From assembly GCA_053919585.1 (NCBI GenBank), contig CM132788.1: 64,000 nucleotides of DNA, one strand, 5' to 3'. The stretch's first letter is position 1. Each line of letters opens with the position of its first letter. This DNA comes from Euprymna scolopes. Lineage: Eukaryota. Below are positions 3,268 to 47,118 of the stretch, piece by piece. The notes below the pieces were generated by a model that saw nothing but the letters and a program-made list of their open reading frames with translations, had not been told where the DNA came from and ran no database searches. Both the position numbers and the translations under genes were made by a program.

Positions 3268-3549
3268 AATATATATATATATATATATATATAGTTACTG
3301 CTTACAACAGCACGTTTGTCAAAGTCAAATAAATATCTGACGAAGAGATCTTTCTCGAAATATTCTATTACACGGATATACCACCAGACCGACTCTCCCA
3401 AGTGACCACTGTGCAAATATAAATATACTGTGTATATGAAATATGAAATTGTACGCATGTATTTATAAGTTCTATTAATAAATTTCTCACATGCTTCAGC
3501 TTGTGTCTTTCCGTTACTTCTGCATTGTACCGCCTTCTACAATTCTATT

Positions 3550-3589
<40 letters not shown>

Positions 3590-3656
3590 TATATATTTAT
3601 AAATACATAAAATTATTTACACACTATTTATATAGCTTACATATATTACCTAATAA

Positions 3657-3706
<50 letters not shown>

Positions 3707-3757
3707 TGAAAAAATGAGAGATGCAAACGCACGTATCTACCGAACTATGCATATATT

Positions 3758-3815
<58 letters not shown>
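3268..3815. repeat. Cluster of (TA)n and (GA)n microsatellites
   Basis: Four TA runs and one GA run. Similar TA runs recur at about 10495, 13597, 18441, 22319, 27463, 29683, 35047, 35747, 36549, 36873, 38076, 39697, 39923, 41006, 41804, 44497, 50123 and 53567. Confidence 0.95.
3330..3370 (+). ncRNA. Minimal hammerhead ribozyme-like motif (probably decayed)
   Basis: CTGACGA(3337)-A-GAGA/tctt/TCTC-GAAA-TAT. Weak stem I (AATA/TATT) with a mismatch. Lies between TA tracts. Confidence 0.4.
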
Positions 3816-3816
<1 letters not shown>

Positions 3817-4319
3817 CAAGAGGGGGGAGAGAGAGGGGACAAGAGAGAGATGCCTGTGTTTGTGTCTGCAATGGAAAAGTTGAAACGAGTTAAACACAGT
3901 GATAGATCATGGAAATAGGTGGGCCATCAATTCCGTTTTAATAAACGAACAAGTTAAAAAAAGGTTAAATCTCTAATTTATTGAAATAGCCTAATAATTA
4001 TGTTATTTTATTCATTATTGTAAAATAGCTTTGTGAAACTCAAAACAGTACAGTCGCACGTCTTATATTCTGACATGTTGTTTACTAATTTCAATAAAAA
4101 TAAATAAATTACATATTTTTTAAAGATTTCTGATAATCGATATAAAACTGGCTAAACTGTCGTGTTTAATGATTTATTGAGGTGTTAAACTTGTTTTTCT
4201 TTTGTTTTTATTTCCATGCGTTTTCTCCTTGACATTTATTTTAGTGGTATAGTTCATATTTACAGACTCAAACACACGAACACACAAACCTTTTCATATA
4301 TATATATATTATGTACATA

Positions 4320-4558
4320 CAGTAATATCTTGCTACGATGTGCAAGACGTTTAAATCATATTAGATATCATCAAGCAAGACAAATTATGGCGCAAAAATA
4401 GAAATGTACCAGACCTTTTTAAAATTTTGACGTAAGAAAATGTGTCAAAATTTGAAACGGTCTGTACCTTTTTTTTTAGTTTTTGAACCTTAATTTTTCT
4501 TGTCTTATAGTATCTAATATGATTGAAACGGTCTGCTCATCGTAGCAAGGTATAACTG
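4320..4558. mobile_element. Palindromic (fold-back) Tc1/mariner-superfamily MITE, 239 bp
   Basis: TA|CAGTAATATCTTGCTACGATG...CATCGTAGCAAGGTATAACTG|TA. Arms are complementary almost to the centre, with CAGT/ACTG ends and a TA target-site duplication. Confidence 0.85.
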
Positions 4559-4653
4559 TATTTACATAAAAAATTGAAACATATAACTTGCTATCTTATG
4601 ATTGAGCACTATCAACGACCCTTGTTGAAATTAAATTATTTTCATTTTTTGGA

Positions 4654-4822
4654 NNNNNNNNNNNNNNNNNNNNNNNNNNNNNNNNNNNNNNNNNNNNNNN
4701 NNNNNNNNNNNNNNNNNNNNNNNNNNNNNNNNNNNNNNNNNNNNNNNNNNNNNNNNNNNNNNNNNNNNNNNNNNNNNNNNNNNNNNNNNNNNNNNNNNNN
4801 NNNNNNNNNNNNNNNNNNNNNN
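4654..4822. other. Assembly gap/masked N run. Others: 9553-9754, 20058-20234, 25654-25887, 27135-27265, 28192-28339, 28351-28524, 30549-30696, 31623-31767, 45299-45571
   Basis: N runs in the sequence. Confidence 0.99.
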
Positions 4823-6259
4823 GTATCATGTCAAAATAAATGATAATTCTACGTATCTAGAAAATCTATCATACGGCATTATTATGTAATCCCATATATA
4901 ATAATTTGATTGCAGAAAGTTCTCTCATGACCAAAGTACACAAGGTTTACTTCAACGGAGGCAACACACAAATTATATCTAGACTATTTTCCAGCATATT
5001 ATATAACTTGTGAACGCCATCCTACACACATTTACCCGATATATTAAAATCTTACATGACATCATATCTAGCGTAAATATATACAATGGATGTAGCTTCT
5101 ATGTTTCCCACGAAATAAAAAGTACTACTTCCGCTCCCAGTCGACAAAAAAAGGTGTTCTGCATACTCCACACTGAAGTTTTACTATGATTACATGGACT
5201 TTGTTTTATAATTACATTTAATAGACATCGACCAACAAGAATATAATGTTGTTTTTATTTTACAGTAGATATATTTCTGTTTACTTTACGCGATCGAGTT
5301 CTTATCACTGATATCATGACTCAACTTTATAATATTAAGTTATTTCGAGGGTCAGATTGTCATAGGTTCGTCGTGGCGTAGTCGATAAATGCGTTTTAAA
5401 CTTTCACTCTTGACCTCTTCGGTTAATTTTCGTTATTTTTCCCCTTGACCAGTTTACGCCACTATTAGCAATTTTTCAAGGTATATTTATATTTTTTATA
5501 TTTCTGAGACACTCAAATGAATCAGATAGCAAAATAAAGTGTTTTTCCTAATCACCATAAATTTTATTACATAAAAATAGATCATTAAACATAATTTATT
5601 TCCTTACAGGTATATAATACAAAGCTTATTTCATAAATTTTACAATAATTATGTTTCTGTTGTACAACACATTGCATTTAAAAAAAGTTAATATTGTTCC
5701 AATCTCATAATTGTTTTACTTCTATTGTTCATAATAGAAACAAAATCCTGTACTTAATTTTCCACTCACAAAAACGTGTGTATTATGTAAAAACACAAAC
5801 TGTGTTGTTTATACGGTGTATTTATTCTGCTTACTTAAAACTGTTCATTTCTGAGAAACCGCGTATAATTTTTAAATTATAACGTACATGTGACGACAGG
5901 AAGTTAGGTCCCTTGAAGTAATATAGGGCCCGAGAGTGTTTGCTACCTTAATCCAATCTTCCCAACAAAAGACATGTTCTGAACAATACCCTGAAAAATA
6001 CCATGGCCACTACCCTGTAAAATAACCTGAACCATACCATACGCGCCAGCTAGGTTCGCACGAACCAAAAGGCACTGCGGCCACTCAGAAAATTGCGTGT
6101 ACATTCCGAAAGCAGTTTTTGTGGAGTGTTTTTCGAAAGCCGTTCCTGGGTGTGTCTATTCTGAAAGTCATTCTTTACATGAAGATGTTGGGGGTTCTTC
6201 AACAACAACAACTACAACAGAAACCGCACTTTATAGTTTTATGCAAGGAAGGGATGCAT

Positions 6260-6310
6260 GCAACCACCAAGCAATGCCGCTTATCGGGTACTGCCAGTTG
6301 GATATTAATA
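6260..6310 (+). mobile_element. Possible decayed Helitron-like 3' terminus
   Basis: GCAATGCCG..CGGGTACTGCCAGTTGG resembles the GCAACGCCGGG..CTAG ends at 36548, 41802 and 43238. Confidence 0.3.
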
Positions 6311-7014
6311 AGTAATGTATTTATCATAAGTTCTAATGGTGTGTGGATATTGCTTCTGTCACTTATCCTTGCTGAGATAGACTCCAACATACGTTAAAAA
6401 ATATATGGAGCGTTTCATTATGCTATGCATTTCCAGCTAGTTTTCGTAGGTAAAACATTTCGGCCCTGTATTTAATCAACCGTATCTTACATTGAAAATG
6501 TAAGACTAATCACCAATCTTTTTTTGCCGTTTTTGTAACATATCAAATTTGCACAAATTTTCTTCATTATTTCAACGTATTCTTCTCACGTGTAACCATA
6601 TAATTATTATATCGTAAGGAGGAACGTATCCCCATAACCTATACATCTATTAACGAAACTTTGTCCCCACCATGTTGCCCAAATGACAGTCTTACATTTT
6701 ATGTGTATATTACAATCTTGTCGTGTTATAATCAAGTCTAAACGATGTTCAACATTCTCATGAAGTGTTATATATTTGAAGAAAGAACTCCTAAAACGTG
6801 ACTGTTTTACTTAATAATATTTGTACATTATAAAAATATGTTTAATATACAGTATAAAACGTTATGACATAAATCAAATAAACTAGTATGTTGCTATCTT
6901 CTACGACTAATTAGCAGCGTTGATGGAAGGGAGGTCAATTGTTTTGCTTTATAGAGTGTTGTTATTGGCCAATTGAGAAAGTGGAATGTGGTGTTTATAT
7001 ATACTTAAGGGGAA

Positions 7015-7054
7015 TAGAGTTTCATGCATGCCCTATGACATGCATGAAACTCTA
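7015..7054. repeat. Perfect 16-bp inverted repeat (8-nt spacer) ending in GAAACTCTAGTA
   Basis: TAGAGTTTCATGCATG / CATGCATGAAACTCTA. Confidence 0.8.
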
Positions 7055-8501
7055 GTAAGCCTTGTATGCATCTCCTAATTAGGATGATTTTATTAAATAC
7101 TTTATAACTGAATTATATGTGTAAGTAATCAAAATGGTATACACATGTGAGTATATTAGTAGTGCGCCATTGTGTTCTTGTTGTAAATTCGTATGCAACT
7201 GTATAACGCATTTCGGTTCAGTTAGTTACTGTTATTCACGCGTGAGATTGATCAGACTTGTATATGCGTCCATGAAGATAAATTTTTGCCTTTCTTCGTC
7301 CGGTTAAAGTCCCGATGACCACTGTGGATCATAAGTTCTGGATCATTCTGTAACTCCAGCTTGTGGAGTTTGTCGTGAACGTTTCACTGTTTCTTTCCTT
7401 ATTTTAAAGTAATTTCTAATTTCTGATCAGTTTATTATTATACGATACATTTGTTACTTTTGCGGTTCGAAACGATTGTCATTTTTTGATAATATTTCAG
7501 TTAGCATGTTCTTGTAGACACTGTTTTGTACATGAAATTTAAAAAATGTACTATTACACCGTATAAACAAAGACAGTAGCATTACATCAAGTGAATATTA
7601 AGCAGTTTTCAGTATCACAATTGGAGTTCACTACATTCTTAAAACCTAAATGTAATTCATCGTAACAGGAAAATATAGATCAACGTATATAATACGTTTT
7701 TTTTTATTTCACCTTGGTAACTTTTATTCATGTAAGTTTTCATTCGTCAATTGCTACCGAAAACATGCCACAATTGAAACATGTTACGTAGAAAATCGAT
7801 GCCGAATGAGTATTCAGATGACATTTTCATATAGGCTGCTAAGAAGCTACCGCACACTGGAATATTTGATTCAGATATTGCACTCGGGAACATGTTTCTT
7901 CTATCTATTTTAAAAATTAGCAAATTGCGAAGATGTTCCTCTTACAAACAAATATTGGTTAACGAATAAAATGAGTTGAAAAAAAAAAGATTCGATTAAA
8001 TAACTAAATGTTTTTCTTATTTAAAAAAAATCTATTAAGAAATATTTCAGTCACAACCTTCAAATAAATATATAGAAAGAAATTATTCTTTAAAAAATAC
8101 GCATTTACACAGTCGAATTCAGAAATTCTTCTTCATATCGAATTATGATGCAGAAATTATATTTCTCTTCTATAAAAATTATATTCTTTACATAAATAGA
8201 AAAAAAATGAACCCCCATTCAATAAAATGTGAACATTTTAAAAGAAAAAAAACTATATGATTTGATATCAAGAACATTCTTCATTACTTCGAACTGGGAT
8301 TAAAAAAAATGCGTCCATTCAATGAAAATGGATTACACTTTTTTAATGAACCTTCACATGCTGATGTGTCTCATCTCAGATTGAGAAAAATAGAACTTAT
8401 GATTGATACTCATTTTTATTCAGCACGTTTTTTTCTTTATTGTATGGTGATGCTTTATCAGAAATGTAATTTATTCTAGTGAAACAAATAGTTAAATATA
8501 A

Positions 8502-9148
8502 TGTTAGAGAAGGTTTGAACAGCAAGAACTCTTTGCTGTAGTCACGAAAGCTCGGTCCACCTAATAAAGATTAATGGAATGATAATCAAATGAAAAAAAT
8601 TCAAATTAGACTAGTTGCTAAGGAGGCGTAATCCCAGCTGTAATTCACTTACTAAGCGAAATTCTAGTTTATAATAATCAGATAAAGCTGGTAGTTAAAG
8701 AACGTAAATCTAGTGAATAAAATCCTGGATTATCATAAATTGTGATAAGGATTGTTAAAGCCAGAATAGAGGAGAACGAAAGCAACGATCACTAGCAACT
8801 GACTCTTTTACCACTCACGCAAATTCGGGGAGTTCTGAAATTTATAAGTACTCATAAATTCTAGATTAGTATGGAGAGGACTGTGGCACTATTTGTTCTG
8901 ATGCAACTTTCAGCGTAGTAACATAAATATTCGTTCTGAGTGATCAGGCCTGTCACGTAAGAGTAAGGCAATATACTTCCCATAATCGCATTCTCATCTC
9001 TCTCTTTTTCTTTATCTTGCTCCATTGCTTTCGCGCAAAAGAATTAGCCAAGGAAGCCTAGCTAGGGTAAAAGAAAACTGTTGTAATTAAAGTATTAATG
9101 TTTAATGCATAAAATTATTAAATAAATAGTTTAGTTCTTTTTTCTACA
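8502..9148 (+). mobile_element. Possible solo LTR
   Basis: TGTTAGAGAA...TTTTCTACA termini, TATA-like TTTATAAG and AATAAA near the 3' end. No TSD found. Confidence 0.3.
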
Positions 9149-9153
9149 ACCTC

Positions 9154-9552: not shown

Positions 9553-10477
9553 NNNNNNNNNNNNNNNNNNNNNNNNNNNNNNNNNNNNNNNNNNNNNNNN
9601 NNNNNNNNNNNNNNNNNNNNNNNNNNNNNNNNNNNNNNNNNNNNNNNNNNNNNNNNNNNNNNNNNNNNNNNNNNNNNNNNNNNNNNNNNNNNNNNNNNNN
9701 NNNNNNNNNNNNNNNNNNNNNNNNNNNNNNNNNNNNNNNNNNNNNNNNNNNNNNCTTGAAAATCTCTTCTGCACATATTTGTCATTTACCTGAGAGATAT
9801 ACTACATCGAAAAACAGGAAGAGTAAAATGTTCAGAAAAAAACACAATCGCATGAATTGTAAAGAAACAACGACCATTCATATAAAAGTTTGACATAGCT
9901 TCCACTACAAATATTTGTGAAAAATATTCCAGCATGCATAGATCGATAAAAACCATGCAATCAAATCAAACGAGAATGCTGTTTGAATATCATGCGCAGT
10001 GGCTTCTTCGATCTGACATTTTTATTGAAATACATACAGAATTTTTGAAGTAAAACTTAACAAAAAATCTATTTCATTTCAATTTTTTTAAGAAGCAGGA
10101 AAAACTCAGTATTTTATAGAAAATATGAGAAGTATGATATCGATTAAAGTATATTCGACCTTTTCATTATATCCCATATTACTCGATCATAAAATGGTTG
10201 TACGCTTCTCGCTGAGCGCTATGCAACTGTGTATGATAAATAAATACAAAAAGACATTTTCGTAAAAATAATTGTTTAACAATAACGGATTTTTTTACTG
10301 AATTCATTCAAAAATAGTTATTTATTTGTCATTTCTAATTTTTGGAATATTTCTCATAAAACATGGATATTTATACGCTTTCAGTGTATCTCAATAAATA
10401 CATATTTTATATTTTAATAAATCGTTAATATATCTCTTGTTTCTCTCTCTACCTCACTCTACACACAGACACACACG

Positions 10478-10531
<54 letters not shown>

Positions 10532-10930
10532 TGTGTGTAAGTTAGTGTGCATATGTGTGTGCAATACTAGTAATCTTTTTAGCAAAGAAATATGTGAAAA
10601 GATAGTAGAAGCTGTACACGATTAAGTAGGGAAAACTAAAATAGGGAGAAAGATAATTGGAATGGAATACTTAATTTCATCATTAGGTCAACGTAAAAGT
10701 AAAAAAAACCTAAGATTTCAAGATGAGCCTTTATGCTTTATATCAGAATATGAGAAAACAGACTATAAATCTATAAAAAGCTATATATACATACAGCCTC
10801 AGGAAGTGAAAATATAGGTAGACATAAGATAACAGAAAGGAGCGTATATGATAGAGTAGGCAATACATAGGAACGGATACCGGAAAATATATACAATACA
10901 TATAAGAAACATTAGCGAAAATGGGAAACA

Positions 10931-21810: not shown

Positions 21811-22322
21811 ATTCAAAAGTTCAAAGTTTAAAAACTAAATCCATTTATTTTTTAAATCCATTAGAGACGCTGTAACAATGTTGGATAGGACATAATCGAT
21901 TTTAATACTATTTCCATTCAGTCTTTGTAGATGTTCTACATAATTTAGCGTACGCATGTATACCAATACAAGTATTAATAACCAATATACTTCTCGTAAT
22001 ATATCTAATAAAATGATTTAATATGTGTAGTTTCTTTCAAAATGTTTGTATTTTGTCTGTAGATTTAATATTTGTAATTTCTTTTTGTAGATTTAATATT
22101 TCTAGTTTCTTTCAAAATATTTGTAGTTTCTTTCTGCAAAATGGTATGTTTTACAAACCTCTATTCTCTGATGAGAAAAAATTCAATTTTAAAACTTCGC
22201 AGGATAATGTCTTTAAATATATTTGTACTGTTTGTCGGATAATTTAAATTTTGTTAACCTTTCTTGAAGGCTTGTTTATGTTTTTTTACAATTTAAGTAC
22301 ATTTCCAATAATACGTGTTATA

Positions 22323-22400
<78 letters not shown>

Positions 22401-28130: not shown

Positions 28131-29359
28131 TAGATGATGGCAAACCAAAAATACTTATATAAGTGCTATTTCTTAAAACTACCTAGCATTTNNNNNNNNN
28201 NNNNNNNNNNNNNNNNNNNNNNNNNNNNNNNNNNNNNNNNNNNNNNNNNNNNNNNNNNNNNNNNNNNNNNNNNNNNNNNNNNNNNNNNNNNNNNNNNNNN
28301 NNNNNNNNNNNNNNNNNNNNNNNNNNNNNNNNNNNNNNNAATTAGATAGANNNNNNNNNNNNNNNNNNNNNNNNNNNNNNNNNNNNNNNNNNNNNNNNNN
28401 NNNNNNNNNNNNNNNNNNNNNNNNNNNNNNNNNNNNNNNNNNNNNNNNNNNNNNNNNNNNNNNNNNNNNNNNNNNNNNNNNNNNNNNNNNNNNNNNNNNN
28501 NNNNNNNNNNNNNNNNNNNNNNNNAGGAAATCCAGTGAATGTTGGTCTGACAAAAGTCTGACAAAATATTATTGGCTGTAAAGACAATCCCAGATAAATA
28601 AACACATCCTAATCTACAATAAAGCGCAAATAAATAATAATATAGAAATATAAACTTTATGATGTGTAATTTTTACATTTCAAATCAAGAATTATTATAT
28701 GCAAGAAAAAGAACGCATTTCAATAAGTATAGTTCCTTAAGCTTTAGGTGTTCAATGTGTACACATTTTCTCAGAGTAGAAAATATTAGCAAATATTATA
28801 ACGGTTCATACCTAATTTCCCTCATACAATAAACATAGAAACTCATAATAAAAAGTTTTCTAAAGGTTTTTAATCATAGAGAATGGGAAATCATATGTAG
28901 GTTCAAAATGAAAAGTATATTGATTTTCATATCCTAATTGTATGGTAAATTCCGAAGTTAACGTCTTTAGTAGTCGTATCCGCTCCGTATTTTGAATCTT
29001 TTACGGCACACGGTAACAATCCGAAGTTTTCATAATTCCTTGGTTCTTTCCTTTGTTTAGATGATGCTTCTGTTAAATGTATTATTATATAAGTCCAGTG
29101 AAGGGTTTAAACACATATTCTTTATATATTTATTTTATATTTTTTTTTATAATATACAATTTTCAAAGTCTAGTCTCAATTAATTTCTATTTGTGAATAA
29201 AAAGAGTTTCTGGAGACGGACAACGCAAAATGAAATGAAATAAATAAATGAAAAGAAAGGAATTGCTCATGCATTGTACTTTTAAATAAGCCGAAGTGAA
29301 AATGTATCCAATTGAAATCATATTCTTAAATTTAAGCGGGTTGTGGTGGGGGATTCAAG

Positions 29360-29678: not shown

Positions 29679-29764
<86 letters not shown>

Positions 29765-30285: not shown

Positions 30286-30987
30286 ATAGTTCATGGTTTT
30301 CCTGTTGTATCCTTGTTCATTATTGTTCTAAATCTTCATTTAAATAACTATTTTCCACTGTACGGGGTTCTTATTTGCCTTCTCGATTTGAATTTCCTTT
30401 TGTTTAAAATTGACGTGAACACTAGGATGTTCAATTAAAAGTCTAATATAAACAAAGAAAATTATAGAGGAATAAACGCAAATCAAATATATTATACTTC
30501 TTTAACCAGTTGCATTCAATTATCTTTAATATTTCTTAAGAATGCGAANNNNNNNNNNNNNNNNNNNNNNNNNNNNNNNNNNNNNNNNNNNNNNNNNNNN
30601 NNNNNNNNNNNNNNNNNNNNNNNNNNNNNNNNNNNNNNNNNNNNNNNNNNNNNNNNNNNNNNNNNNNNNNNNNNNNNNNNNNNNNNNNNNNNNNNNAAGG
30701 TAGGTCGTTTTTTTCACTTTCCCCAGAATATTAGAAAATTGCACCAACCCGAAGTTGCTGCTGGACTTATTAAGTACTTATGTAAAATATAGATTAAATG
30801 CTTCAGTGTGTTTTTTAGCGTTTTGTATATATAGACAAAAATATACTGAAAATTCTACGTTTATGTGCGCTTTGTCTAGAATATTCGTGTGAATACAAAA
30901 AAAAAAAAAAAAAAACACACACACCAGTATTTCAAATAAGGGGATGTCTTTTTATTTTTTTTATTTATAGTTATGTCTCGGAAGTAG

Positions 30988-31455
30988 AGTGAAAAACACA
31001 TCTTATTTTTCTTTTATTAATATTTTTTTTTTCCTTGTACACATTTTTGTGAATTATTCCATGGATTTCTGCCTTTGGATTATTATGGACCATCTTCTTC
31101 CAATTACGGGATTTCTTTGGATTTTACGTGTACAAATGGAAATTCTTTTAACTTTCTTGAAGTTTTACATTTGGATTTTACCGTCACTGGATTTTTTTAT
31201 CTTCCACCAGACTATCCATTAATGTGTAATCACCTTTTTCTTTACCATATTCCCTCTGCTTAACTTATTTTGTTTTCAAGTAAGATCTTTGACTTATTTG
31301 TTGTTTCATCAAATACTTCTGCATGCAAAATCCGATCCTACATTTTGGTAATTCCTACTCTCTGATGAGAAGGAGAGTATTTCTTCGAAACTCCACGGAT
31401 TAAGGACTATCCATTTATCTAGTGTTTCCTTTTCAAATTAAATATGTTTTTAACT
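30988..31455. mobile_element. Fold-back element with inverted hammerhead-bearing arms (family A, copy 2)
   Basis: Left arm ATTCCATGGATTTC (~31056); right arm CTGATGA..GAAACTCCACGGATTAAGGA; outer arms weakly complementary. Confidence 0.55.
31352..31408 (+). ncRNA. Type I hammerhead ribozyme motif (intact core, imperfect stems I/III)
   Basis: CTGATGA 31362; stem II GAAGGA/gagtat/TTCTTC; GAAA 31387; TCC/GGA stem III; TTA triplet. Confidence 0.6.
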
Positions 31456-32789
31456 CATTTCAAAGTGTTTTAACATATTTCTATTAACTATTTGCCCATA
31501 TTATAAGCTCTATTTCCTATTTGGTATTATCGAGCTTTTATATCTGGCTGAGATAAGTTTATAAATATTAATTCTTTAATATTTATAATTTACTTTAATT
31601 TTTCCATCTTGGATCATTTTGGNNNNNNNNNNNNNNNNNNNNNNNNNNNNNNNNNNNNNNNNNNNNNNNNNNNNNNNNNNNNNNNNNNNNNNNNNNNNNN
31701 NNNNNNNNNNNNNNNNNNNNNNNNNNNNNNNNNNNNNNNNNNNNNNNNNNNNNNNNNNNNNNNNNNNGCCATGTAATTTCTACTGAACAAATGATTATAA
31801 TTCTCTAACAAGTACATTTGTGTACGGCAAAGTACACATCAGATTTGGAACGATTAAGTACATATCAGGTCTATCTAACAAGAGTGTTTTTTTAATGTAG
31901 AATTATATTCTTGCAAAAGAAAAACGTCGGTTGGCAATGTTATTCTTGATATTTTTGCCATATAATGATTTGTTTCCGCGCGGTTTTCATGAGCGACATT
32001 ATATTGAGAGTAAGATTTCCCAACGGAAAGTATCGTTGTACAACGTCCAAAAAATACCTTACATAGACAGATGCAATCGAGCAGAAAGATGAGATGATGT
32101 CCATCACAAATTGTGGAAATAATTCGCCAAGTGAAGGATAAAACAACTTGGTAAAAAGATTATAATGCACCCAAAATAAATTAAGGTTATTACTTCAGTT
32201 AGCTGATACTCTTATTTCAAAGCTCACTTATCTTACTCTGATATATACTTTTTAATCGCAGCGGCTCATTATTTCGTAACTTTCTATGTAATAATGAACA
32301 AAATACAACATAAATATATGTGAGCCAAATCACGTGGTTTATACAGAATGTAGTTAACTAATTTGAGTTGAAGGATTAATATTAACTATAATGAAACCTT
32401 TTGTCATAATTAACATATGCATTAAATGTAAGAATTAAGTATGTTTTCTATTAAGGTAAATAGCACAACTGGAGAAATGAAAGAAAAAGTATAAAAATAG
32501 TCGATGTGTGTGTTTATTTATACTGATTTCAAGTAATATCTGCATTATATGAGAGAGTGGCAATATTGTAACATTATCTTGGATGGATTATATTGTTCTT
32601 TTACACGTTTATGAGCATATCTAGCAGTGTAGTTGTCACTATTTTCTTAGTTTTGCAAACTTTCGAAAAGCAACGCATTTGCCTGTTTACAAATCAAATG
32701 TGTTTCTTTTATATGGTGTAAGAACATACATCAATATCCGGCAATTAATAAAATAATAACATGTGTTTATGAAGTACTTTGCAGTTAAT

Positions 32790-36551: not shown

Positions 36552-36594
<43 letters not shown>

Positions 36595-36596
<2 letters not shown>

Positions 36597-36869
36597 CTAT
36601 ATATATATACTTCATTTACTAAAATAAAATTAATATACGAAAGTATAAATTTATGCGTAAACTTCAAGTATTTACTTCAAAAGTGCTAAATACGTAGATA
36701 AAGCTAGTTAGTAAGTTATAAAATATAAATGGCGATTAAGCTACACTGAATATTCCGCAGTCCATCCACTCTAGGACTCTTCAGTCTTATACGCATAAGC
36801 CTGAAGAGTCCTAGAGTGGATGAAACGCGGAATATTCAGTGTAGCTTAATCGCTATATATTTTATAACT

Positions 36870-36874
<5 letters not shown>
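36595..36874. mobile_element. ORF-less fold-back element (family B) in (TA)n, with a 166-bp palindrome at 36709-36874
   Basis: Near-perfect ~80-bp inverted arms centred at ~36792; flanked by TA runs; homologue at 39739-39925. Confidence 0.8.
36796..36848 (+). ncRNA. Type I hammerhead ribozyme, complete secondary structure
   Basis: Stem I TAAGC(36796)/GCTTA(36844); core CTGAAGA 36801; stem II GTCC/tagagt/GGAT; GAAA 36822; stem III ACGC.GAA/TTC.GTGT; GTA cleavage triplet 36841-36843. Confidence 0.8.
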
Positions 36875-36915
<41 letters not shown>

Positions 36916-38115: not shown

Positions 38116-39689
38116 AATAAGAAGGGGTCACCGACAATGTGTATTTTTTAGCATTAATTTATTATTCCGTGTTTTAGTTTTTCATTGAAAATTATGTGTA
38201 GATCATTGTAATAATGTTTTTAAATCATTGAAATCGTTTTTAACGCGTTTCAGATGTTCTGTGAAGCGTTCTATTTCTCTCGTTAGAATTTATTAACCCA
38301 TTGCATATATATATATATATATATTTGTACATATATATACATATACACACACACATATATATATATGCAAAGTAATAAATAGAAAACGCAGCTATGTACA
38401 AAATCATAAACAATATAATAAACACTTAACAATAAAAATAATATTGAACACTGCCACAAAGATAAACTTACAAAAAGATTTTTTAATTCTCATGTTTGAA
38501 GTGATTTACAGTAAAACTTTACTGCTAATGTACTAACAACTTAACTTATAAGTTAATAGATTATAGTACTGCTTCTAGATTTGGAATATTACCTGCATTT
38601 TAGTAAATAACCCTCGCTTTGGTTTTTCCGGCAACATTCACCAATATCTAACAACCTTCAAAAACGTCATACTCGGTATCCTCTCATTCTGATGCGTTTA
38701 TTTCACAAACACATGTACCGCAATACCGAAATTGCATTGAGACTGTGACATGCGACAAAAAATTCCTAATAAAAATATGATTTTAATATTGTTCTGCAAA
38801 ATCTATCACATCATGATAACGTTATTTGAGGTAGTTGCATACACTTCTTACTAGATTTACATTCATTGCCATATTGTTGTCTTTATTCCAGGGTACCAGA
38901 TTAAATATATTGTTTACATTATACGAAAGTTAGACAAGCATTATCAACATCTAATAGAGGCAATTATATTTAAAAACAAAAACGTCTAAACACATCCCAT
39001 CTATTGTAATTACAGGTAAGATATGTTGGCATGTGTAATATACAAAGCTGAAATAACTGATAGGTATGCAGTACAGCTTGTCAATTCTGAAGAAAACCTG
39101 GTCTTACAAGTACATCAATTTAACACTCCGAGATGTATTAATAAATGCGATTATTTTATAGTTGCCTCATGCGAATCTATCAAGATGAAAATACTTGAGA
39201 ATAAAATGAAATAAGAATCTTTTAAGATAGATATAAGTTTCTTTACACACATTAGACCTGCCCATCTCCCACATCCTTTGCTTTCCTACTACTCTAATTC
39301 GAGATACACAAAGCCAATTCACAAGGGGTGTCTATAACTTAGTGTCAAATATAGCTAAAGCCAAATAAAGTAGATTGCTATAAAGTTTAAATCAAATGGA
39401 AATGCATTTCTTACTCTAAATTTCATATCAATACTTTATTGTATATACGTATCGCAGCTATACATGTTTGGTTAATGCATGATTATATTTCCAGACTTAC
39501 TCATGTGGATAATTTGAATAAAACGTTTGATAAGCACAATTGTTTGGATTATTTGATGCAGGATTTACATCCAATGATTTACGATAAAACTAATCCTTAG
39601 AAAAGCAGTTAATCTAGTTTTTATTTAATAAAAATTCGGAAATTAGAAAGTTAAATCCTTTTAATAAAGAAATATACACAGGCGCACAC

Positions 39690-39738
<49 letters not shown>

Positions 39739-39920
39739 TTAAGTTATGAAAATATATATGGTAATTAAGACGAAATATTCTCTGTAGCTTAATTGCCATA
39801 TATATTTTATAACTTAATACCTATCTTAACATATGCATCGAGAACTGTTGAAGTAAATACTGAAAAATTAAGAATAAAATCATGTCTTTGGATATTAATT
39901 TTTGTGACTAAGTAAAATGG

Positions 39921-39925
<5 letters not shown>
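39739..39925. mobile_element. Second family-B fold-back element with the hammerhead core deleted
   Basis: 39818-39925 is the inverted homologue of 36595-36708. The residual palindrome at 39739-39817 keeps AATATTCTCTGTAGCTTA but has no CTGAnGA. Confidence 0.75.
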
Positions 39926-39957
<32 letters not shown>

Positions 39958-41001: not shown

Positions 41002-41069
<68 letters not shown>

Positions 41070-41081
<12 letters not shown>

Positions 41082-41801
41082 AATTTACTAGTGTCTGCGA
41101 GTTCATTCCTTATAGACTCCGATACGGGTGAACATATTCATTATTTTTAATTACAGAACTTTAGTTTATAAGTCTGGAAGTGATTTTACCAAGTTTTGTC
41201 TCAGAATGCCCCTGATAATAACCGATAATCGATAATCGAAACCGTTATCTCATTCATCTATCACCGGTAAAGCCATTTTTTCCATGTTTTCGTAAGCTAC
41301 GACGCTAGCAGCTAATTGAACAACGGGCTGTAAAAATTCTAATCTGCTTTGTGTGTGCGTGTGGGGGGGTGCGTGTGTGTGTGTTTTGCTTTTTGATTTA
41401 TTTATCATTTTTGCATGGCGTGATCTGTAGGTTCGAACTCCGCACATAATTTTTTTTTCATTAACTCCAAAGAATTTTATGAGACTTTTAAATTTACGAA
41501 TCTTTTTTTTTGTTTTGTTTTGTTTTGTTTTTTGCATGCTCAAAACCCGAAGTAAATTTCTCAATGTTTTTTTTTTTTCGTTAACCGGAAAGAAGTTTAT
41601 ATAAAGTAATTTTACAAAAACAAAATAGTAGGTTCTCTAGAGTGCAATGTAGAAGACCATATGTTGGACTAAGCTACTGCATGAAGGCGTGGGAAGCTTC
41701 CTCTCGGGCAATTTCACCAATTTCGATGACAATAAAAATATAGGAGTGTGAAATATCTGTTGATCATCATTCAATACCGGCAACGTTGGTTGTCCCTGCT
41801 A

Positions 41802-41802
<1 letters not shown>
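41070..41802 (+). mobile_element. Non-autonomous Helitron-like element between (TA)n tracts
   Basis: 3' end ACCGGCAACGTTGGT hairpin + TGTCCCTGCTAG|T; 5' region CTTATAGACTCCGATACGGGTGAAC. Confidence 0.55.
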
Positions 41803-41874
<72 letters not shown>

Positions 41875-43237
41875 TTTCCAGCATGCTGAAAATATCTAGA
41901 ATTGTTGGAAAAATACACCAAGATCACGTACTGCAAAAAAGAACGAAGAATGAGCCAACTGAAAACTCGCCGAATCAATATACCCAGTTCCATGTATGTA
42001 TACAAGAAGTTCTCTACAAAAAGAGGATCATCCCACTATGAGCAAATTACAATCATAATAGCTGCTCAAAATTAAGGTTTGATAAATATATCTTTGAAGT
42101 ATTTAAGTCTCATCAATGAAAACAAGAATAGGGCATGTCGCACCTCAATAGAAAGTATGAGTCTCCTTACGTTCAACTGTAATATTCTGTTGTGGGACAG
42201 CTTCTATGCGTTGCAAAACAATAGGGTGTGTAAATATATCCCCTTGATCACCTGTAAATAAGTTAGATGTCGTATGCAGCAGCAAGTCCTTGTAAACATA
42301 CAATAAAAAGCAGTTAAAAATAAGCCAAACACCATCCAGTATATGTTACATGAAACGGTGGTCTCCTTCTCATGGCAATAAGAAGGCATACTAGATAAGT
42401 GAAAACAATATTAGGATAAGACTAGAATCGAAGCCTGTAAGAAAGTGTTAACGATAATGGAAATGGAATGTAAGAAATTCAGTCCATTGTTAATTCTATT
42501 AAAAATAGTTAAATATTGTCTTTGTCGGAAAAAGAGTCTATTATCAATTCTTTTAGAAATCTGGATATTAAATATGTCAATTAAATGAATGCACAATGCG
42601 AGTAAAAATATATTGTTTTAAAATAGGTTAGAATTCGATTGAGGATTCTTTGCTTGCCAAAAGTGTGTTTGGGCAATCATTTGTAAACCCACTTGACTAC
42701 ATCACGTAAGTAACCACACTTCTGACGTTATAAATAAAATACGATTTATCAATATAGAAATCTGAGGGTTCGAAGTAAGGTGGATGAGGATCAGATATTC
42801 AGAGCTGATCACAGACGGTGATATCCAGCTGGAGAGGAGAGTCCCTTTGTAGCTAATGGGGGAAAATAGACCATGTAAATCAAAGTTTGAATTCAATTTA
42901 AAAGCAGAAAAATAACTGTATTCTTCAACTCTAACTTCAGTAATTACTGCCGTCCATAGATGTTGTCGTCGCCTTACAAGGATTTTGTCAATAAATCTTT
43001 TCGTCGGCCTTGTGTAGGATATAAACCGCTATCTTCAGCCAATGCTCCCCTGATAATGTAGAGATTCAACGTCTCTATCCATGGAGGCACGGGCGATTAA
43101 AGTTGGATGTTTGTGCTCTTTTAAATACAAGTGTCTTTTACCTGATCTTCCATTTGCGGGTCCGTACCGAATCGTATGTATTATTTGATTAGTGGAATTC
43201 TTTTCAGATGAGTAGTTTGTATATTTGTATTTATTTA

Positions 43238-43910
43238 CTAACCTGGTAGCCCGGCGTTGCCCGGGTGTTTGTAGGTATGTGTTGAGCAAAAAAAAGAAAA
43301 GTAGTAGAAGGGAAGGCGGGCTCGAACCCCTACCGTGAAGAAGGAAAAGAACGTGAAAAAATGTGGCGTTTTGCTGTTGCTCCCATCGCCAACCGGAAGT
43401 GATGTCGAAAGTGTAGGCAGACAAATATACACACATATATACGTACATTTTAACAGACAGGTGAGATTTATATTATATATTATATTGGATGCAATATATA
43501 GAATGGTTTAAAAAGGTAAAAGAATAAAAACTCGTGTGCCACCACCGAGAATCGAAACAAAAATGTTCAGCTTACGATTTATTTTTGCCTCTGCCGACAA
43601 TGACTGGGCTATGTAGACCCGTTTACTGCAAGGTTAAAAATTACAACATGAACCAATAGCTACTACGTTATGAGTGTATAATGCCGGCGTTCGACCTTCA
43701 CTTGACAAATTTAATTTTTTTTTAATTTTCACACTTTTACGCTTATTTTTCCGGGCTAAACACAAAATATAAAGTTCCGCATGTATTCAAATACCTTATA
43801 TATGAAGTTTCATGTATGTAGACCAAAAACTATCGCAGGACTGTAGTAGACAAAGTTTGTTAAAGAAACAATAAAATATATATGGAAACAATTTTGTGTT
43901 TAGTATAAAT
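43238..43910 (-). mobile_element. Non-autonomous Helitron-like element carrying tRNA-like boxes
   Basis: Minus-strand 3' end CCCGGGCAACGCCGGG hairpin + CTACCAGGTTAG|T. Internal B-box-like GGTTCGAGCCC (~43320) and an A/B-box-like segment at 43540-43615. Confidence 0.6.
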
Positions 43911-44492
43911 TTTTTACGCAAATATTACGGCAGTATACATCATGTACAACAACGGAAGGAATATAATTGCAAGAAATAGTTAACTAAAGATTAGCATCCC
44001 ATAAGAAAACCGAAGAAGGTAATTGGGAATTAATTAAAGTGAATGTTTAAAAGAATATAAAAATTAGCTAGATCTTTTACTAGTGAATGCAATTCCACGA
44101 CCCATATATAAGGCACTTATATTTTCTTTTTAAATAAAGAGAGAAAGGGATTTTAATATGAATATCTATACACACAGGACAAAAAAAACAATTAATAGGA
44201 GTATAGATTTGCGGAATATTATCTTCATCTTTTCTAGTTGTTATTTTACGATTAAACATAACTATTCCGTCGTCGTTAACAACGTGACGAAGACCAGTGC
44301 AATAGTTGTTCAAAACCTGGATTTATAAGACTCAAAATCCAATCTTGATCGCCCTCCCAGTTCCGTGGCGGAGTCCATAGAGTACAAATAGAACATTGCT
44401 ACGAGAGTTAAACAGCGCCGATTCAGGAGAGGTTTGGCTGGTGATCGCGTCACCCTTGTCTCACAATAACATACGCAGTTGCACTTACAGGG

Positions 44493-44544
<52 letters not shown>

Positions 44545-44570
44545 ATATATATATATATATATATATATAC

Positions 44571-45200
44571 ATTTACTTCTTAAATTTAAATTCTGAAATC
44601 CAAATATAGGCAGATATATTCGAGTTAAGAATTTGTTGTTTGACAAAAGGAATATATAGAAGGGGTTATATTAATTTCCTTAATCCATGGATTTTCAATT
44701 AGGTAGAATATCGGTCCAGGGAAGAAAGCAGTAATCCCATATAACAAAATGCGTGGTTGCTCCTTATTGATATTTCGAAAGGTATACGGGTCGACCGTGT
44801 TCGTTGGTGTTTTGAATGCGTTTTTATATATGTAATCCTTGACCAATATTCTGCCTACTTGGAAATTACCCCGGAGGACATTATACTCCTTCCGATAATG
44901 AACTGCGCAGGTTGTATGAAATTCTCTCTTTCAATAATTATTTTCATATAACAATCATTCACCACCAAAAAACTATTTTCAATATTTGTGCTGAAAAGTA
45001 AAATAAGTGCTTTTTCACAACTGAACATTTTGTTAACTGCATTTCATTTCCTCTGATGGTATGAGCCATTATTTTATTATTCCATGGATTAAGGAAAATA
45101 ATATAACCCCTCTATAGATTCCTTTTGTCAAACAACCAATTTTTCACTCGAATATATTTGCCTATATATTGATTTCCGAATTAAAATTTAACAACTAAAT
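44571..45200. mobile_element. Fold-back element with ~125-bp TIRs whose inner ends are hammerhead motifs (family A, copy 1)
   Basis: 44571-44693 and 45081-45200 are inverted repeats flanked by TA runs. Minus arm reads GAAAATCCATGGATTA AGGAAAT; plus arm reads ATTTCCT CTGATG...TCCATGGATTA AGGAAAT. Confidence 0.85.
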
Positions 45201-46544
45201 ATATATATTGCTCTATTCTTAAATATTGAGCTTTTCTTTTTTGGCTAAGATCAGCCTAAAAGCGTTACCTCTAGTCATATCTATCAGGATTTTCATCGNN
45301 NNNNNNNNNNNNNNNNNNNNNNNNNNNNNNNNNNNNNNNNNNNNNNNNNNNNNNNNNNNNNNNNNNNNNNNNNNNNNNNNNNNNNNNNNNNNNNNNNNNN
45401 NNNNNNNNNNNNNNNNNNNNNNNNNNNNNNNNNNNNNNNNNNNNNNNNNNNNNNNNNNNNNNNNNNNNNNNNNNNNNNNNNNNNNNNNNNNNNNNNNNNN
45501 NNNNNNNNNNNNNNNNNNNNNNNNNNNNNNNNNNNNNNNNNNNNNNNNNNNNNNNNNNNNNNNNNNNNNNNTAGACGCATGAGCTTCTGCCACAACAATT
45601 ACGTTGCTCGGAAATACTCACTGATGATTACTTTATACTAGTGAAGACTTTGTTTAGATCCAACCACACAATTTTGATATTACTGCTAATTTTTGACATT
45701 GCAGATAACTGCCACGGACCAGAGTATACATTAGACAGCAGGTTTTTATATCAGAGTTTTCCTTTCCTTGATGCATGTCTTTATGAAACTTGGGGCAGAT
45801 CTCGCAAGTGAATTAATGCATCCGCAGATGCCAACCTGGACATTTCTAGGATTCTACGCGGTGCATGCAACGCGATAGCCTTCATACATAGTAACCAATC
45901 TAGTACTGGCCAGGCATATATTCATATTATTGTAAAATATATTTCATGATCAGGGTTAAAATGTGGTGACGTGTGGGCAAGGTAAGATGTATGTGATGTG
46001 TGCCACACTATATGATGTAATATAAATAGGGTTTTTTTTCTGTATTTGGTGTACGCATTAGCAAATGGTCATGATTAGACATGATTTTATTTTATTTTTT
46101 CAAATATTTTATTGTAATCTGTGTGTTTTACTTGCTCCATAAAATTCATATCATAGCATTGTAACAATTTTCTGTTATTTTTAGGATACCATTCCCCTTT
46201 TACTTTTGCTCACACATTTCCGCAAAAACACTTTTACTATATGGATATGCATTATTAAAATGTAGCTGAAGTATGATGATAAATCCCATCATAAAAACAT
46301 ATGGCATAACAATTTTCGACGGAAAATTTGCGGATTGTATTAACCCGTATTAAGAACATACGGAAAACAATTACATCGGCATATGTTTTTGGTTTACTAA
46401 ATTTCCCATTACTCTATAATATCCGAATTAGGATGTTTATATTTTTATGTGACATTCTCCGAACCAACTTTACAAACTTAACGAATAGAAAACAGAAATA
46501 ATATAAATCGCTGAAATGTATTAATTGTAAGTTGTGCATTTTAC

Positions 46545-46644
46545 CTGTTCTCAGCAGTAATATGAGTGTTTTCATTTTAATAATGACATCCAGCTTGGAT
46601 AATATATCAAAGATATGTTGTGTATTGCAGCTGCGTTTTAAAGT
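46545..46644 (-). CDS. Candidate exon containing ATG: MKTLILLLRT (signal-peptide-like), phase-1 donor
   Basis: tttttcatatatag| ... aaaATG(46575) ... ACAG|gtaaaa. An upstream donor at 46737 would give a 93-nt intron. No homology support. Confidence 0.25.
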
Positions 46645-46839
46645 CTATATATGAAAAATTAATTGGTTGCGAATTTAAGACAGTACGTCTTATTGTACGT
46701 GCATTTTATGAAGCTGCTAACAGTTAAGATAAATTACCTATTCAGAATAGCTTAACTTAAAAAAATTTGAAAAGATAATGAAGAAACTAAATTTTAAAAT
46801 ACTTCGATATAAGCTTAAACTCATATTATTTGCATTCAT

Positions 46840-46915
46840 CGTACTGCACCTATAAATATGGTTTTCACAAAGTCTCGGTCGATATAACTTCCGACCTTCT
46901 TCAGGTGTAGTTTTT
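46840..46915 (-). ncRNA. Inactivated hammerhead-like motif
   Basis: ACTACAC CTGAAGA A GGTCG/gaagttatat/CGACC GAGAC (GAAA mutated); downstream GTGCAGT can pair with ACTACAC. Confidence 0.45.
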
Positions 46916-47118
46916 CGAACTCGGGAATCTTTCTCTCGAACTCGGGAAGTTGGACGAGATTTCGAGTAGATCCCTCTTATTTACTTGTTCTGCTAACCAT
47001 GACTGGGTATAGTAGTTTGCAATTGTATTTTGTGGTCGTCCACAATGTGGATTTAACTTTCAACTTTCAGGAGAGTACCACTTTTTAGAATTGATTTTTC
47101 CAAGTATGCTCACCTTGC

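What the first reader, a model, noticed from the sequence alone, without database searches (positions are those of the whole stretch)
3300..46920. Candidate system: ORF-less fold-back elements with outward-facing hammerhead ribozymes, several embedded in (TA)n microsatellites
Seen: at least two unrelated families of inverted-repeat elements (A: 44571-45200, 30988-31455; B: 36595-36874, 39739-39925). Each arm carries a CTGAnGA-stemII-GAAA-stemIII-NUH motif, or its relic, reading outward. Decayed cores also occur at 3337, 7032, 22168, 37060 and 46904. Three of the four elements are flanked by (TA)n. Established: Penelope-like elements carry hammerheads in their pseudo-LTRs, often as inverted copies, and retrozymes are non-autonomous hammerhead retroelements. 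Inference: these are non-autonomous Penelope-derived mini-elements that look like MITEs but may move through self-cleaved RNA and prefer or generate TA repeats. No autonomous partner (RT + GIY-YIG) is visible in this window.
Basis: partly seen in the sequence, partly recalled or inferred. Interest (0 to 1): 0.8.

Follow-up and report, generated by a model that had tools for sequence, protein, structure and literature searches.

The report
Truncated Penelope-like retroelements in TA microsatellites
The "fold-back hammerhead elements" are 5'-truncated, often head-to-head copies of Penelope-like retrotransposons and their ORF-less derivatives inserted at (TA)n repeats, carrying degenerate hammerhead-like blocks; this pattern has been described in other animals, so the finding is real but ordinary.

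Summary
The repeats exist, but only three of the four named places are inverted repeats. 30988-31455 is not.

All belong to very abundant families of a 5.9-Gb animal genome:
- **A1** (30954-31622) is the 5'-truncated 3' UTR of an element whose ORF ends in a Hydra-clade-like GIY-YIG endonuclease (at least 41,745 candidate matches genome-wide).
- **A2** (44563-45298) is a head-to-head pair of truncated copies of an ORF-less family of about 1.4 kb.
- **B** (36609-36874) is a 277-bp ORF-less unit with a 5' inverted duplication.

Complete 3' ends abut (TA)n in every sampled A1 and B copy. A1 and A2 5' ends vary, and inverted neighbours are common. These are the known signatures of Penelope-like elements.

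All three families share one homologous hammerhead-like block, with about 26,000 A-type and 6,650 B-type exact matches genome-wide. The A2 and B majority sequences can draw all three helices, but with non-canonical closing pairs on helix II. A1 has a perfect core and weak helices I and III.

No Rfam hammerhead model reaches threshold. RNA-seq shows transcription of A1 but no ends or depth dip at the predicted cleavage site.

The Penelope origin and the TA preference are supported. Movement through self-cleaved RNA is not. This is a known kind with new members.

The parts
30954..31622 (+). Family A1: 5'-truncated copy of the 3' UTR of a Hydra-clade-like Penelope-like element. Its 3' end is hidden by the N run 31623-31767.
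   Evidence: 96% identical to L024:1154-1708 and L026:1157-1826. In L024, L026, L019 and L016 the same sequence continues about 1.2 kb upstream into a GIY-YIG ORF end. RNA reads carry the upstream family sequence as a loose end at 30957.
31362..31407 (+). A1 hammerhead-like block: CTGATGA, a 7-bp helix II, GAAA, the near-palindrome TCCACGGA (family majority TCCGCGGA), then TTA|AGGAC. The predicted cleavage site lies between 31402 and 31403.
   Evidence: No Rfam hammerhead hit at E<=10 in a 271-nt search. Reads show A>G at 31395 in most molecules.
36609..36874 (-). Family B: 277-bp ORF-less unit. Read on the - strand it is a 5' inverted arm, a direct arm, then a unique tail of about 110 nt.
   Evidence: At least 4,244 candidates genome-wide, with 91-94% identical full-length copies. 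(TA)n lies on both sides in 23 of 23 copies. No inverted repeat at its two termini.
36796..36848 (+). Structurally complete hammerhead-like block in the right arm of B: helix I 5 bp, CTGAAGA, helix II 4 bp with a G.U closing pair, GAAA, helix III 4 bp, site GTA|G between 36843 and 36844. The mirror copy in the left arm is disabled in this copy.
   Evidence: 92 of 20,000 shuffles as good; this is the family majority; 42 of 50 arms keep the core. Rfam gives only 12-14 bits to type III models in L034.
36558..36608 (.). (TA)n flank on the left of B.
36873..36914 (.). (TA)21 flank on the right of B.
39739..39921 (+). Diverged, internally deleted B-type copy (short palindrome plus tail) between (TA)18 and (TA)17. 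The hammerhead core is lost.
   Evidence: 79% identical to B_L034:118-277, plus an inverted 41-nt match. Sequence read.
44563..44838 (-). Family A2, left copy of a head-to-head pair. It is 5'-truncated and internally deleted, and its 3' end abuts (TA)n at 44498-44569.
   Evidence: Matches A2_L057:548-685 and 197-343 in reverse orientation. Structure worked out.
44837..45298 (+). Family A2, right copy of the pair.
   Evidence: 90% identical to A2_L057:314-775.
45053..45097 (+). Decayed A2 hammerhead-like block (CTGATGG, GAAA lost, TCCATGGATTAAGG kept).
22168..22209 (+). Old decayed relative of the A-type block, about 120 nt upstream of (TA)34 at 22329-22396.
   Evidence: Read and compared with the family blocks.

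Best explanation
The named places are insertions of Penelope-like retroelements (PLEs) and of ORF-less families derived from their 3' ends.

**How they move (inferred from what is established for PLEs)**
- A GIY-YIG endonuclease nicks a (TA)n microsatellite.
- A telomerase-like reverse transcriptase copies the element RNA from its 3' end at the nick.
- Copying often stops early, which gives variable 5' truncation.
- Copying often switches template, which leaves an inverted partial copy at the 5' side.

**Why they look like fold-backs**
- Two truncated copies lying head to head, each with its 3' end at TA repeats, look like a fold-back element with 'outward-facing' motifs.
- In family B, one such composite (an inverted 72-nt arm plus a direct copy of about 200 nt) became a master. 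It is now copied as a 277-bp unit.

**The hammerhead-like block**
- It is the PLE 3'-UTR/pLTR hammerhead in degenerate or variant form. The block is homologous across A1, A2 and B.
- It most likely was a working ribozyme in the ancestors.
- It is probably weak or inactive in the present high-copy families.
- It is not needed for their spread.
For: **A1 is part of a coding PLE**
- The window copy is 96% identical to L024 and L026.
- In four independent loci that sequence continues about 1.2 kb upstream into an open frame.
- The translation shows YIG..R..H, no CCHH, and CxxC..E..N..CxH.
- Pfam GIY-YIG scores E=0.012. The nearest Atlas clusters are GIY-YIG proteins of molluscs and cnidarians.
- These motifs are the ones PMC8557442 section 11 lists for the Hydra clade.
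- That ORF end has at least 41,745 candidate matches genome-wide, with open frames up to 589 aa.

**Signatures of PLE insertion**
- A1 5' ends fall at more than 20 different positions.
- All 25 complete A1 3' ends abut (TA)n.
- 8 of 19 A1 loci carry an adjacent inverted copy.
- A2 behaves the same way.
- B has TA on both sides in 23 of 23 copies.

**Autonomous PLEs in this genome show the same features**
- L079 is a full canonical PLE: a 797-aa RT + GIY-YIG ORF, 419-bp pLTRs, and a 3' end at (TA)13.
- L037 is a head-to-head pLTR pair between TA runs.

**The shared block**
- 26,087 exact matches to the A-type pattern and 6,651 to the B 30-mer. The reversed controls gave 0.
- Proposed fold on 24 distinct A1/A2/other copies: 86% of cells paired against 78.5% in shuffles and 25-52% when partners are slid. 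Three pairs change on both sides.

**Published precedent**
- PLE min-HHRs have a long helix II, a short helix I and a palindromic helix III. They occur as pairs on opposite strands 100-700 bp apart, read as truncated PLEs (PMC4209133).
- (TA)n targeting and tandem/inverted insertions are described in PMC8557442.
Against: - I never saw the RT of the A1 parent.
- The GIY-YIG call is below Pfam's cut-off (16.4 against 22.6 bits).
- A2 and B share no long stretch with any coding PLE in hand. Their derivation rests on the shared block and on insertion behaviour.
- PMC8557442 says Hydra-clade elements carry canonical hammerheads. These families do not pass the Rfam models.
- The RNA test used poly(A)-selected libraries and covered only A1, so it cannot exclude cleavage.
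Confidence: 0.85

Rival explanations
1. One reading: these are non-autonomous, retrozyme-like elements whose hammerheads are active and whose RNA is processed by self-cleavage as part of mobility.
For: - The A2 majority sequence draws helix I 7 bp, helix II 4 bp and helix III 4 bp (a 12-nt palindrome), with site UUA|A. Only 8 of 20,000 flank shuffles did as well.
- The B majority draws helices of 5, 4 and 4 bp, with site GUA|G. 92 of 20,000 shuffles did as well.
- Helix II pairs with different sequences in A1, A2, B and other lineages.
- Rfam's type I model is built on a minimal helix III, so it may miss B.
- PLE hammerheads are known to act as dimers with low activity.
Against: - No Rfam hammerhead hit in the window and none for the A2 majority. 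B scores only 12-14 bits.
- The closing pair of helix II is U.U in A2 and G.U in B, not G-C.
- A1, the most abundant family, has a 3-bp helix I and a C.U mismatch next to the core.
- MFE folding gives no hammerhead fold and unremarkable z-scores.
- Whole B RNA forms a hairpin of -157 kcal/mol.
- No pile-up of read ends and no depth dip at 31402/31403.
- The elements are not in the tandem arrays that define animal retrozymes.
Confidence: 0.2
2. They are MITEs: deletion derivatives of a DDE DNA transposon (for example Tc1/mariner with a TA target duplication) whose terminal inverted repeats happen to contain the motif.
For: - The window copies of A2 and B look like fold-backs flanked by TA.
Against: - A1 and A2 copies have many different 5' ends and a constant 3' end.
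- The window A2 'element' is two separately truncated copies.
- In B the palindrome is at one end only and the other end is a unique tail, so the two termini are not inverted repeats.
- A1 continues into a GIY-YIG ORF.
Confidence: 0.03
3. The CTGANGA...GAAA matches are chance in AT-rich repeats and have nothing to do with hammerheads.
For: - The bare pattern is only about twofold enriched in the window (7 against 3.05; 3 of 100 shuffles reach 7).
Against: - With a paired helix II the count is 2 against 0.077 expected.
- The block is homologous across three families and sits where PLE hammerheads sit.
- The extended signature CTGATGAG...CGAAAC is shared with the canonical hammerheads of the same genome.
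Confidence: 0.03

Closest known systems
PLE-associated minimal and variant hammerheads (Cervera & de la Pena 2014, PMC4209133)
   Same: - Type I topology in the PLE terminal repeat or 3' region.
- Long helix II (7 bp in A1), short helix I, small palindromic helix III.
- Tens of thousands of mostly single copies.
- Pairs on opposite strands a few hundred bp apart, explained as truncated PLEs.
- Low or dimer-dependent activity.
   Different: - Here helix III is an 8-12-nt palindrome (TCCGCGGA / AATCCATGGATT).
- A2 and B have U.U or G.U in place of the G-C closing pair of helix II.
- Activity is untested.
Hydra and Naiad clades of PLEs (Craig et al. 2021, PMC8557442)
   Same: - Insertion into (TA)n, strong 5' truncation, and partial tandem or inverted copies.
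- For Hydra: a C-terminal GIY-YIG without CCHH, CxxC and CxH around the conserved E and N, and a CxCX5C linker (seen in the L058 family).
- Molluscs are among the hosts.
   Different: - That paper reports canonical hammerheads throughout Hydra. The families here fail the Rfam models, more like the 'HHR_core only' cases it notes in Naiads.
- Copy numbers here are very high.
- The RT motifs (DKT, RWK) could not be checked.
Animal non-LTR retrozymes (Cervera & de la Pena 2020, PMC7229834; Li et al. 2026 preprint, 10.64898/2026.07.22.740005)
   Same: - ORF-less and PLE-derived.
- Carry a type I hammerhead.
- AT-rich.
   Different: - Retrozymes are tandem arrays of 170-400-bp units, each with an efficient hammerhead, and give circular RNAs.
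- The window elements are single or inverted copies with degenerate motifs.
- True arrays of that kind (410-bp period, canonical hammerhead) exist elsewhere in this genome (L005), not in this window.
MITEs / fold-back DNA transposons
   Same: - Short, ORF-less, with inverted repeats.
- TA at the flanks.
   Different: - Variable 5' ends.
- No inverted repeat at the two termini of the B unit.
- Continuity of A1 with a retroelement ORF.

Membership tests
Penelope-like elements | Single ORF with a telomerase-like RT and a GIY-YIG endonuclease | tested here: inconclusive
   For the A1 parent only the endonuclease end was seen (Pfam E=0.012). Open frames reach 589 aa but the RT was not read. A separate full PLE of this genome, L079, has both domains.
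Penelope-like elements | Strong 5' truncation, with partial tandem or inverted copies (pseudo-LTRs) | tested here: met
   A1: more than 20 different 5' ends, and 8 of 19 loci with an adjacent inverted copy. A2 behaves likewise. The window A2 pair is head to head. L079 has 419-bp direct pLTRs and L037 an inverted pair.
Penelope-like elements | Hammerhead motif in the terminal repeat or 3' region | tested here: met
   A core plus helix II lies in the 3' region of A1, A2 and B. It is variant, not canonical.
Hydra clade of PLEs | GIY-YIG without the CCHH motif; CxxC and CxH around the conserved E and N | tested here: met
   Translations of L024:2-472 and L058. The two align at 24% identity, E=6e-8, over this part.
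Hydra clade of PLEs | CxCX5C linker before the endonuclease; DKT and RWK motifs in the RT | tested here: inconclusive
   The linker CNCRHCTLC is present in the L058 family. For the A1 parent the linker and the RT lie beyond the fetched DNA.
Hydra clade of PLEs | Insertion into (TA)n | tested here: met
   25 of 25 complete A1 3' ends. The L058 ORF end is followed by (TA)n.
Hammerhead ribozyme, type I (Rfam RF00163 and related models) | Score at or above the curated gathering threshold | tested here: not met
   No hit in the window, none for the A2 majority, and at most 13.6 bits for B. The same models give 42-57 bits to other elements of this genome.
Hammerhead ribozyme, type I (Rfam RF00163 and related models) | Conserved core CUGANGA...GAAA with three helices and an NUH site | tested here: inconclusive
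   The A2 and B majority sequences meet it, but with a U.U or G.U closing pair on helix II. A1 has the core and a G-C closing pair, but a 3-bp helix I and a 15.2/16.2 mismatch.
Hammerhead ribozyme, type I (Rfam RF00163 and related models) | Site-specific self-cleavage | tested here: inconclusive
   Poly(A) and single-cell RNA reads show no place where many molecules begin or end, and flat depth across 31375-31424. These libraries are not suited to 5'-OH ends. A2 and B were not tested.
Animal non-LTR retrozymes | Tandem arrays of short units, each with a hammerhead | tested here: not met
   The window elements are single or inverted copies. A 410-bp array with a canonical hammerhead exists elsewhere in the genome.
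MITE / DDE DNA transposon | Fixed termini with terminal inverted repeats and a fixed target duplication | tested here: not met
   A1 and A2 have variable 5' ends. The two termini of B are not inverted repeats. Target duplications cannot be read inside TA repeats.

The most novel reading that the evidence does not exclude
The variant hammerheads of these families are active. They differ from canonical ones by an 8-12-nt palindromic helix III and a U.U or G.U closing pair on helix II.

Under this reading they act as dimers or only in partial transcripts. In family B the perfect 79-bp hairpin would act as a switch that hides the ribozyme in full-length RNA, or that feeds a small-RNA pathway.

A second open point is that A1, A2 and B copies end either at the true 3' end or at an internal TA-rich tract. 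That would fit reverse transcription being primed by pairing between the nicked (TA)n target and UA tracts in the RNA.
Probability: 0.15. Interest if true: 0.5.

Novelty: new member of a known kind. Interest (0 to 1): 0.3.

Why it matters
- **Annotation.** Thousands of MITE-like fold-backs and isolated hammerhead cores in this 5.9-Gb genome can be explained by one mechanism. They should not be called DNA transposons, miRNA hairpins or active ribozymes.
- **Biology.** Families whose hammerhead is visibly degraded (A1) reached the highest copy numbers. This agrees with the published view that the ribozyme is dispensable for PLE spread.
- **Link to microsatellites.** The window has 28 (TA)n runs of 8 or more units in 64 kb, and a sizeable share of the genome's TA repeats is tied to PLE activity.
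- **Status.** None of this is new in kind.

Tried and rejected
**RNA family searches**
- Rfam at the gathering score and at E<=10 on the whole window, and on 220-270-nt cut-outs, gave no hammerhead.
- The many miRNA 'hits' are TA/TG microsatellites or the B hairpin, not miRNA genes.
- Weak C/D-box snoRNA hits on the A2 block (under 20 bits) come from the UGAUGA...CUGA letters. I rejected them.
- ARAGORN calls no tRNA in the tRNA-like head of the canonical hammerhead element.

**Alternative element types**
- The MITE/DDE reading is rejected (see rivals).
- I considered a Helitron reading because Helitrons insert at AT. I dropped it because there are no 5'-TC or 3'-CTRR ends and no 3' hairpin near the end, and because the 5' ends vary.

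**Searches that gave nothing or could not run**
- The search for homologous proteins with the 157-aa endonuclease end found nothing, because its length window excludes full-length proteins.
As a result I did not read the RT of the A1 parent or find coding partners of A2 and B.
- BLAST of A1, A2 and B against the canonical PLE L079 found nothing beyond a 12-nt box.
- BLAST of the canonical hammerhead loci against A1, A2, B and the PLEs found nothing.
- Pfam on ten window ORFs gave nothing relevant.

**Disclosure about an N run**
- In some searches I used L011, the genome tool's copy of the window place, as a BLAST query. Only afterwards did I see that the window has an N run at 31623-31767.
- Some alignments reached into that stretch.
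- I did not read or report its letters and left L011, L031 and L055 out of all later scripts. No conclusion rests on them.

Full report
**Setting**

The window is G000:C6:57412001-57476000 of a 5.9-Gb animal genome in 925 contigs, with about 31% G+C. It holds 28 (TA)n runs of 8 or more units. It also holds ten N runs, four more than the scan's program listed. None of the six listed gaps touches the elements studied. Two unlisted N runs cut them: 31623-31767 hides the 3' end of A1, and 45299-45571 hides the end of the right A2 copy. I did not fill them.

Inverted repeats are confirmed at 44545-44664 / 45107-45226 (120 nt, 83%) and at 36719-36790 / 36795-36866 (72 nt, 89%). A short palindrome lies at 39739-39820. 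The region 30900-31520 has no inverted repeat at all.

The bare pattern CTGANGA-N8-30-GAAA is found 7 times against 3.05 expected. When a paired helix II is required, two sites remain, 31362 and 36801, against 0.077 expected.

Rfam reports no hammerhead in the window, either at the gathering score or at E<=10. A 271-nt search around 31362 also finds none.

Of the 'decayed cores', 22168 is a clear relative of the 31362 block and lies upstream of (TA)34. Site 3337 is possible. Sites 7032, 37034 and 46904 are not convincing.

**Family A1 (30954-31622)**

A 161-nt piece around the core has at least 1,263 candidate matches in the genome, and the best 40 are 96-98% identical. Across 19 fetched loci the copies start at more than 20 different 5' positions. 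They end at one of two 3' positions, and all 25 complete 3' ends are followed by (TA)n. Eight loci carry an adjacent inverted copy.

The family does not stop where the window copy starts. In L024, L026, L019 and L016 the same sequence runs about 1.2 kb further upstream into an open frame. The translation of that frame shows:
- a YIG..R..H segment;
- no CCHH motif;
- a CxxC..E..N..CxH tail.

Pfam gives GIY-YIG at E=0.012, below its cut-off. The nearest Atlas clusters are GIY-YIG proteins of molluscs and cnidarians. These motifs are the ones Craig et al. list for the Hydra clade of Penelope-like elements (PMC8557442).

This ORF end has at least 41,745 candidate matches in the genome, with open frames up to 589 aa. 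So the window's A1 is a 5'-truncated copy of the 3' UTR of a coding element. It is not a mini-element.

**Family A2 (44563-45298)**

There are at least 3,511 candidates. Sampled copies again have many 5' ends and two alternative 3' ends (L057:1872 and 2041), both followed by TA, and inverted neighbours are frequent. The longest copies share a 5' boundary that gives a unit of about 1.4 kb with no long ORF.

The window 'element' is two copies lying head to head:
- a left copy on the - strand, 5'-truncated and with an internal deletion;

**Family B (36609-36874, and a degenerate copy at 39739-39921)**

There are at least 4,244 candidates. The best 40 are full-length and 91-94% identical. (TA)n lies on both sides in 23 of 23 copies.

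Read on the - strand, the unit is an inverted 72-nt arm, then the direct arm, then a unique tail of about 110 nt. Its two termini are not inverted repeats. This is the shape of a PLE insertion with an inverted partial copy at its 5' side, now propagated as a unit. Whole B RNA is predicted to fold into a 79-bp hairpin of -157 kcal/mol.

**Autonomous PLEs of the genome**

GIY-YIG (PF01541) has at least 15,395 candidates, many of them in head-to-head pairs by their coordinates.
- L079 is a complete canonical PLE. It has a 797-aa ORF with RVT_1 and GIY-YIG and 419-bp direct pLTRs that are 99.8% identical. Its 3' end sits exactly at (TA)13.
- L037 holds a head-to-head pair of that pLTR between TA runs.
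- L034 holds a second PLE whose 3' end lies next to microsatellites that also border a B copy.
- L058 starts with a third endonuclease end, which has the Hydra-type CxCX5C linker and is followed by (TA)n.

No RT or endonuclease remnant was found in the window itself.

**The hammerhead-like block**

All three families share one homologous block: CTGAnGA, a hairpin, GAAA, then (in A1 and A2) TCC(G/A)(C/T)GGATTA|AGGA. B has the same layout minus three bases.

The A-type pattern has 26,087 exact matches genome-wide and the B 30-mer has 6,651. The reversed controls gave 0.

| Family (majority sequence) | Helix I | Helix II | Helix III | Predicted site | Flank shuffles as good (of 20,000) |
|---|---|---|---|---|---|
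| A1 | 3 bp | 7 bp, G-C closing pair | palindrome TCCGCGGA, with a C.U mismatch next to the core | UUA, then AGGA | 16,067 (not better than shuffled) |
| A2 | 7 bp | 4 bp behind a U.U pair | 4 bp within a 12-nt palindrome | UUA, then AGGA | 8 |
| B | 5 bp | 4 bp, G.U closing pair | 4 bp | GUA, then GCUUA | 92 |

On an alignment of 24 distinct A-type copies the proposed fold pairs 86% of cells. Shuffles give 78.5% and slid partners give 25-52%. Three pairs change on both sides. Because only two main lineages are sampled, this amounts to about three events. Further lineages listed show other helix II sequences that also pair.

Against activity:
- Rfam models give nothing, or at most 13.6 bits. 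The same models give 42-57 bits to other elements of this genome.
- MFE folding shows no hammerhead fold and unremarkable z-scores.

One caveat applies. Rfam's type I model has a minimal helix III, so its silence on B is weak evidence.

**RNA**

Four raw-read RNA runs were laid on 30900-31622. The family is transcribed, with summed depth of several hundred. One strand class is about 4-5 times more frequent than the other. Under the usual library conventions, the commoner class is antisense to the element.

No place is reported where many molecules begin or end. Depth is flat across the predicted site 31402/31403 in both strand classes. A few reads join opposite strands, as expected from inverted copies. 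These are poly(A)-selected or oligo-dT libraries and only A1 was tested, so this argues against efficient cleavage but does not exclude it.

**Comparison with what is known**

Cervera and de la Pena (PMC4209133) described PLE hammerheads with these features:
- a long helix II, a short helix I and a small palindromic helix III;
- massive copy numbers, mostly as single motifs;
- pairs on opposite strands 100-700 bp apart, which they read as truncated PLEs;
- low, dimer-dependent activity in vitro.

Craig et al. (PMC8557442) described (TA)n targeting in Naiad and Hydra, 5' truncation, and tandem or inverted insertion structures. They also noted families that keep only the hammerhead core yet proliferate.

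Animal retrozymes, which are tandem arrays with efficient hammerheads, have been linked to PLE pLTRs (PMC7229834; preprint 10.64898/2026.07.22.740005). The window elements fit the first two descriptions and do not fit the third.

**Verdict**

The Penelope origin and the TA preference are supported. 'ORF-less mini-element' holds for B and probably for A2, but not for A1. Mobility through self-cleaved RNA is unsupported. This is a new set of members of a known kind.

Noticed in passing
L001-L010 (e.g. G000:C14:103757133-103757177, G000:C8:10432194-10435515): The genome's canonical type I hammerheads (RF00163, 42-57 bits) sit in a different element. It has a tRNA-like head with A- and B-box-like letters (ARAGORN calls no tRNA), then the hammerhead, then a 65-nt tail that ends at (TA)n. 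L001 has an inverted truncated copy beside it. At C8 the unit forms a 410-bp tandem array that is 99% identical and starts at a TA run, like a retrozyme. There is no BLAST similarity to A1, A2, B or the PLEs in hand.
   Followed up: partly
L079:3240-3325 and L037:960-1045: The canonical PLE of L079 carries its own variant block about 45 nt from its 3' end: TTGAAGA (T in place of the first core C), a 5-bp GC-rich hairpin, then GAAAC and a short ACGT palindrome. Rfam reports nothing for it at E<=1.
   Followed up: partly
window, whole; e.g. 3270-3815, 22329-22396, 29683-29760, 41006-41079: There are 28 (TA)n runs of 8 or more units in 64 kb, about 1.9% of the window. Only some border families identified here. 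The rest may border other, older PLE-derived pieces.
   Followed up: no
A1 copies (L026 family positions 553 and 694), A2 copies (L057:1872 and 2041), B inverted arm: Each family has two alternative 3' ends. One is at an internal TA-rich tract, and both are followed by (TA)n. This would fit priming of reverse transcription by pairing between the nicked TA target and UA tracts in the RNA.
   Followed up: no
window 30950-31470: RNA reads of the A1 family are 4-5 times more frequent in one strand class in four libraries of three designs. Under the usual conventions that class is antisense to the element. It could reflect the orientation of copies in host transcripts, or oligo-dT priming on A runs of the antisense RNA.
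   Followed up: no
window 28351-28524, 30549-30696, 31623-31767, 45299-45571: Four N runs that are not in the list given with the finding. Two of them cut the A1 and A2 copies.
   Followed up: yes
window 63109-63711 (- strand) and L066:1-631, L074, L039: Fragment of a different repeat whose translation looks like the C-terminal part of a LINE reverse transcriptase. It is unrelated to the finding.
   Followed up: no
window 10469-10558 and 38294-38373: Compound (TG)n(TA)n(CA)n microsatellites give sub-threshold Rfam miRNA matches on both strands. These are artefacts of simple repeats.
   Followed up: yes
It has no hammerhead core and was not traced to a family.
   Followed up: partly
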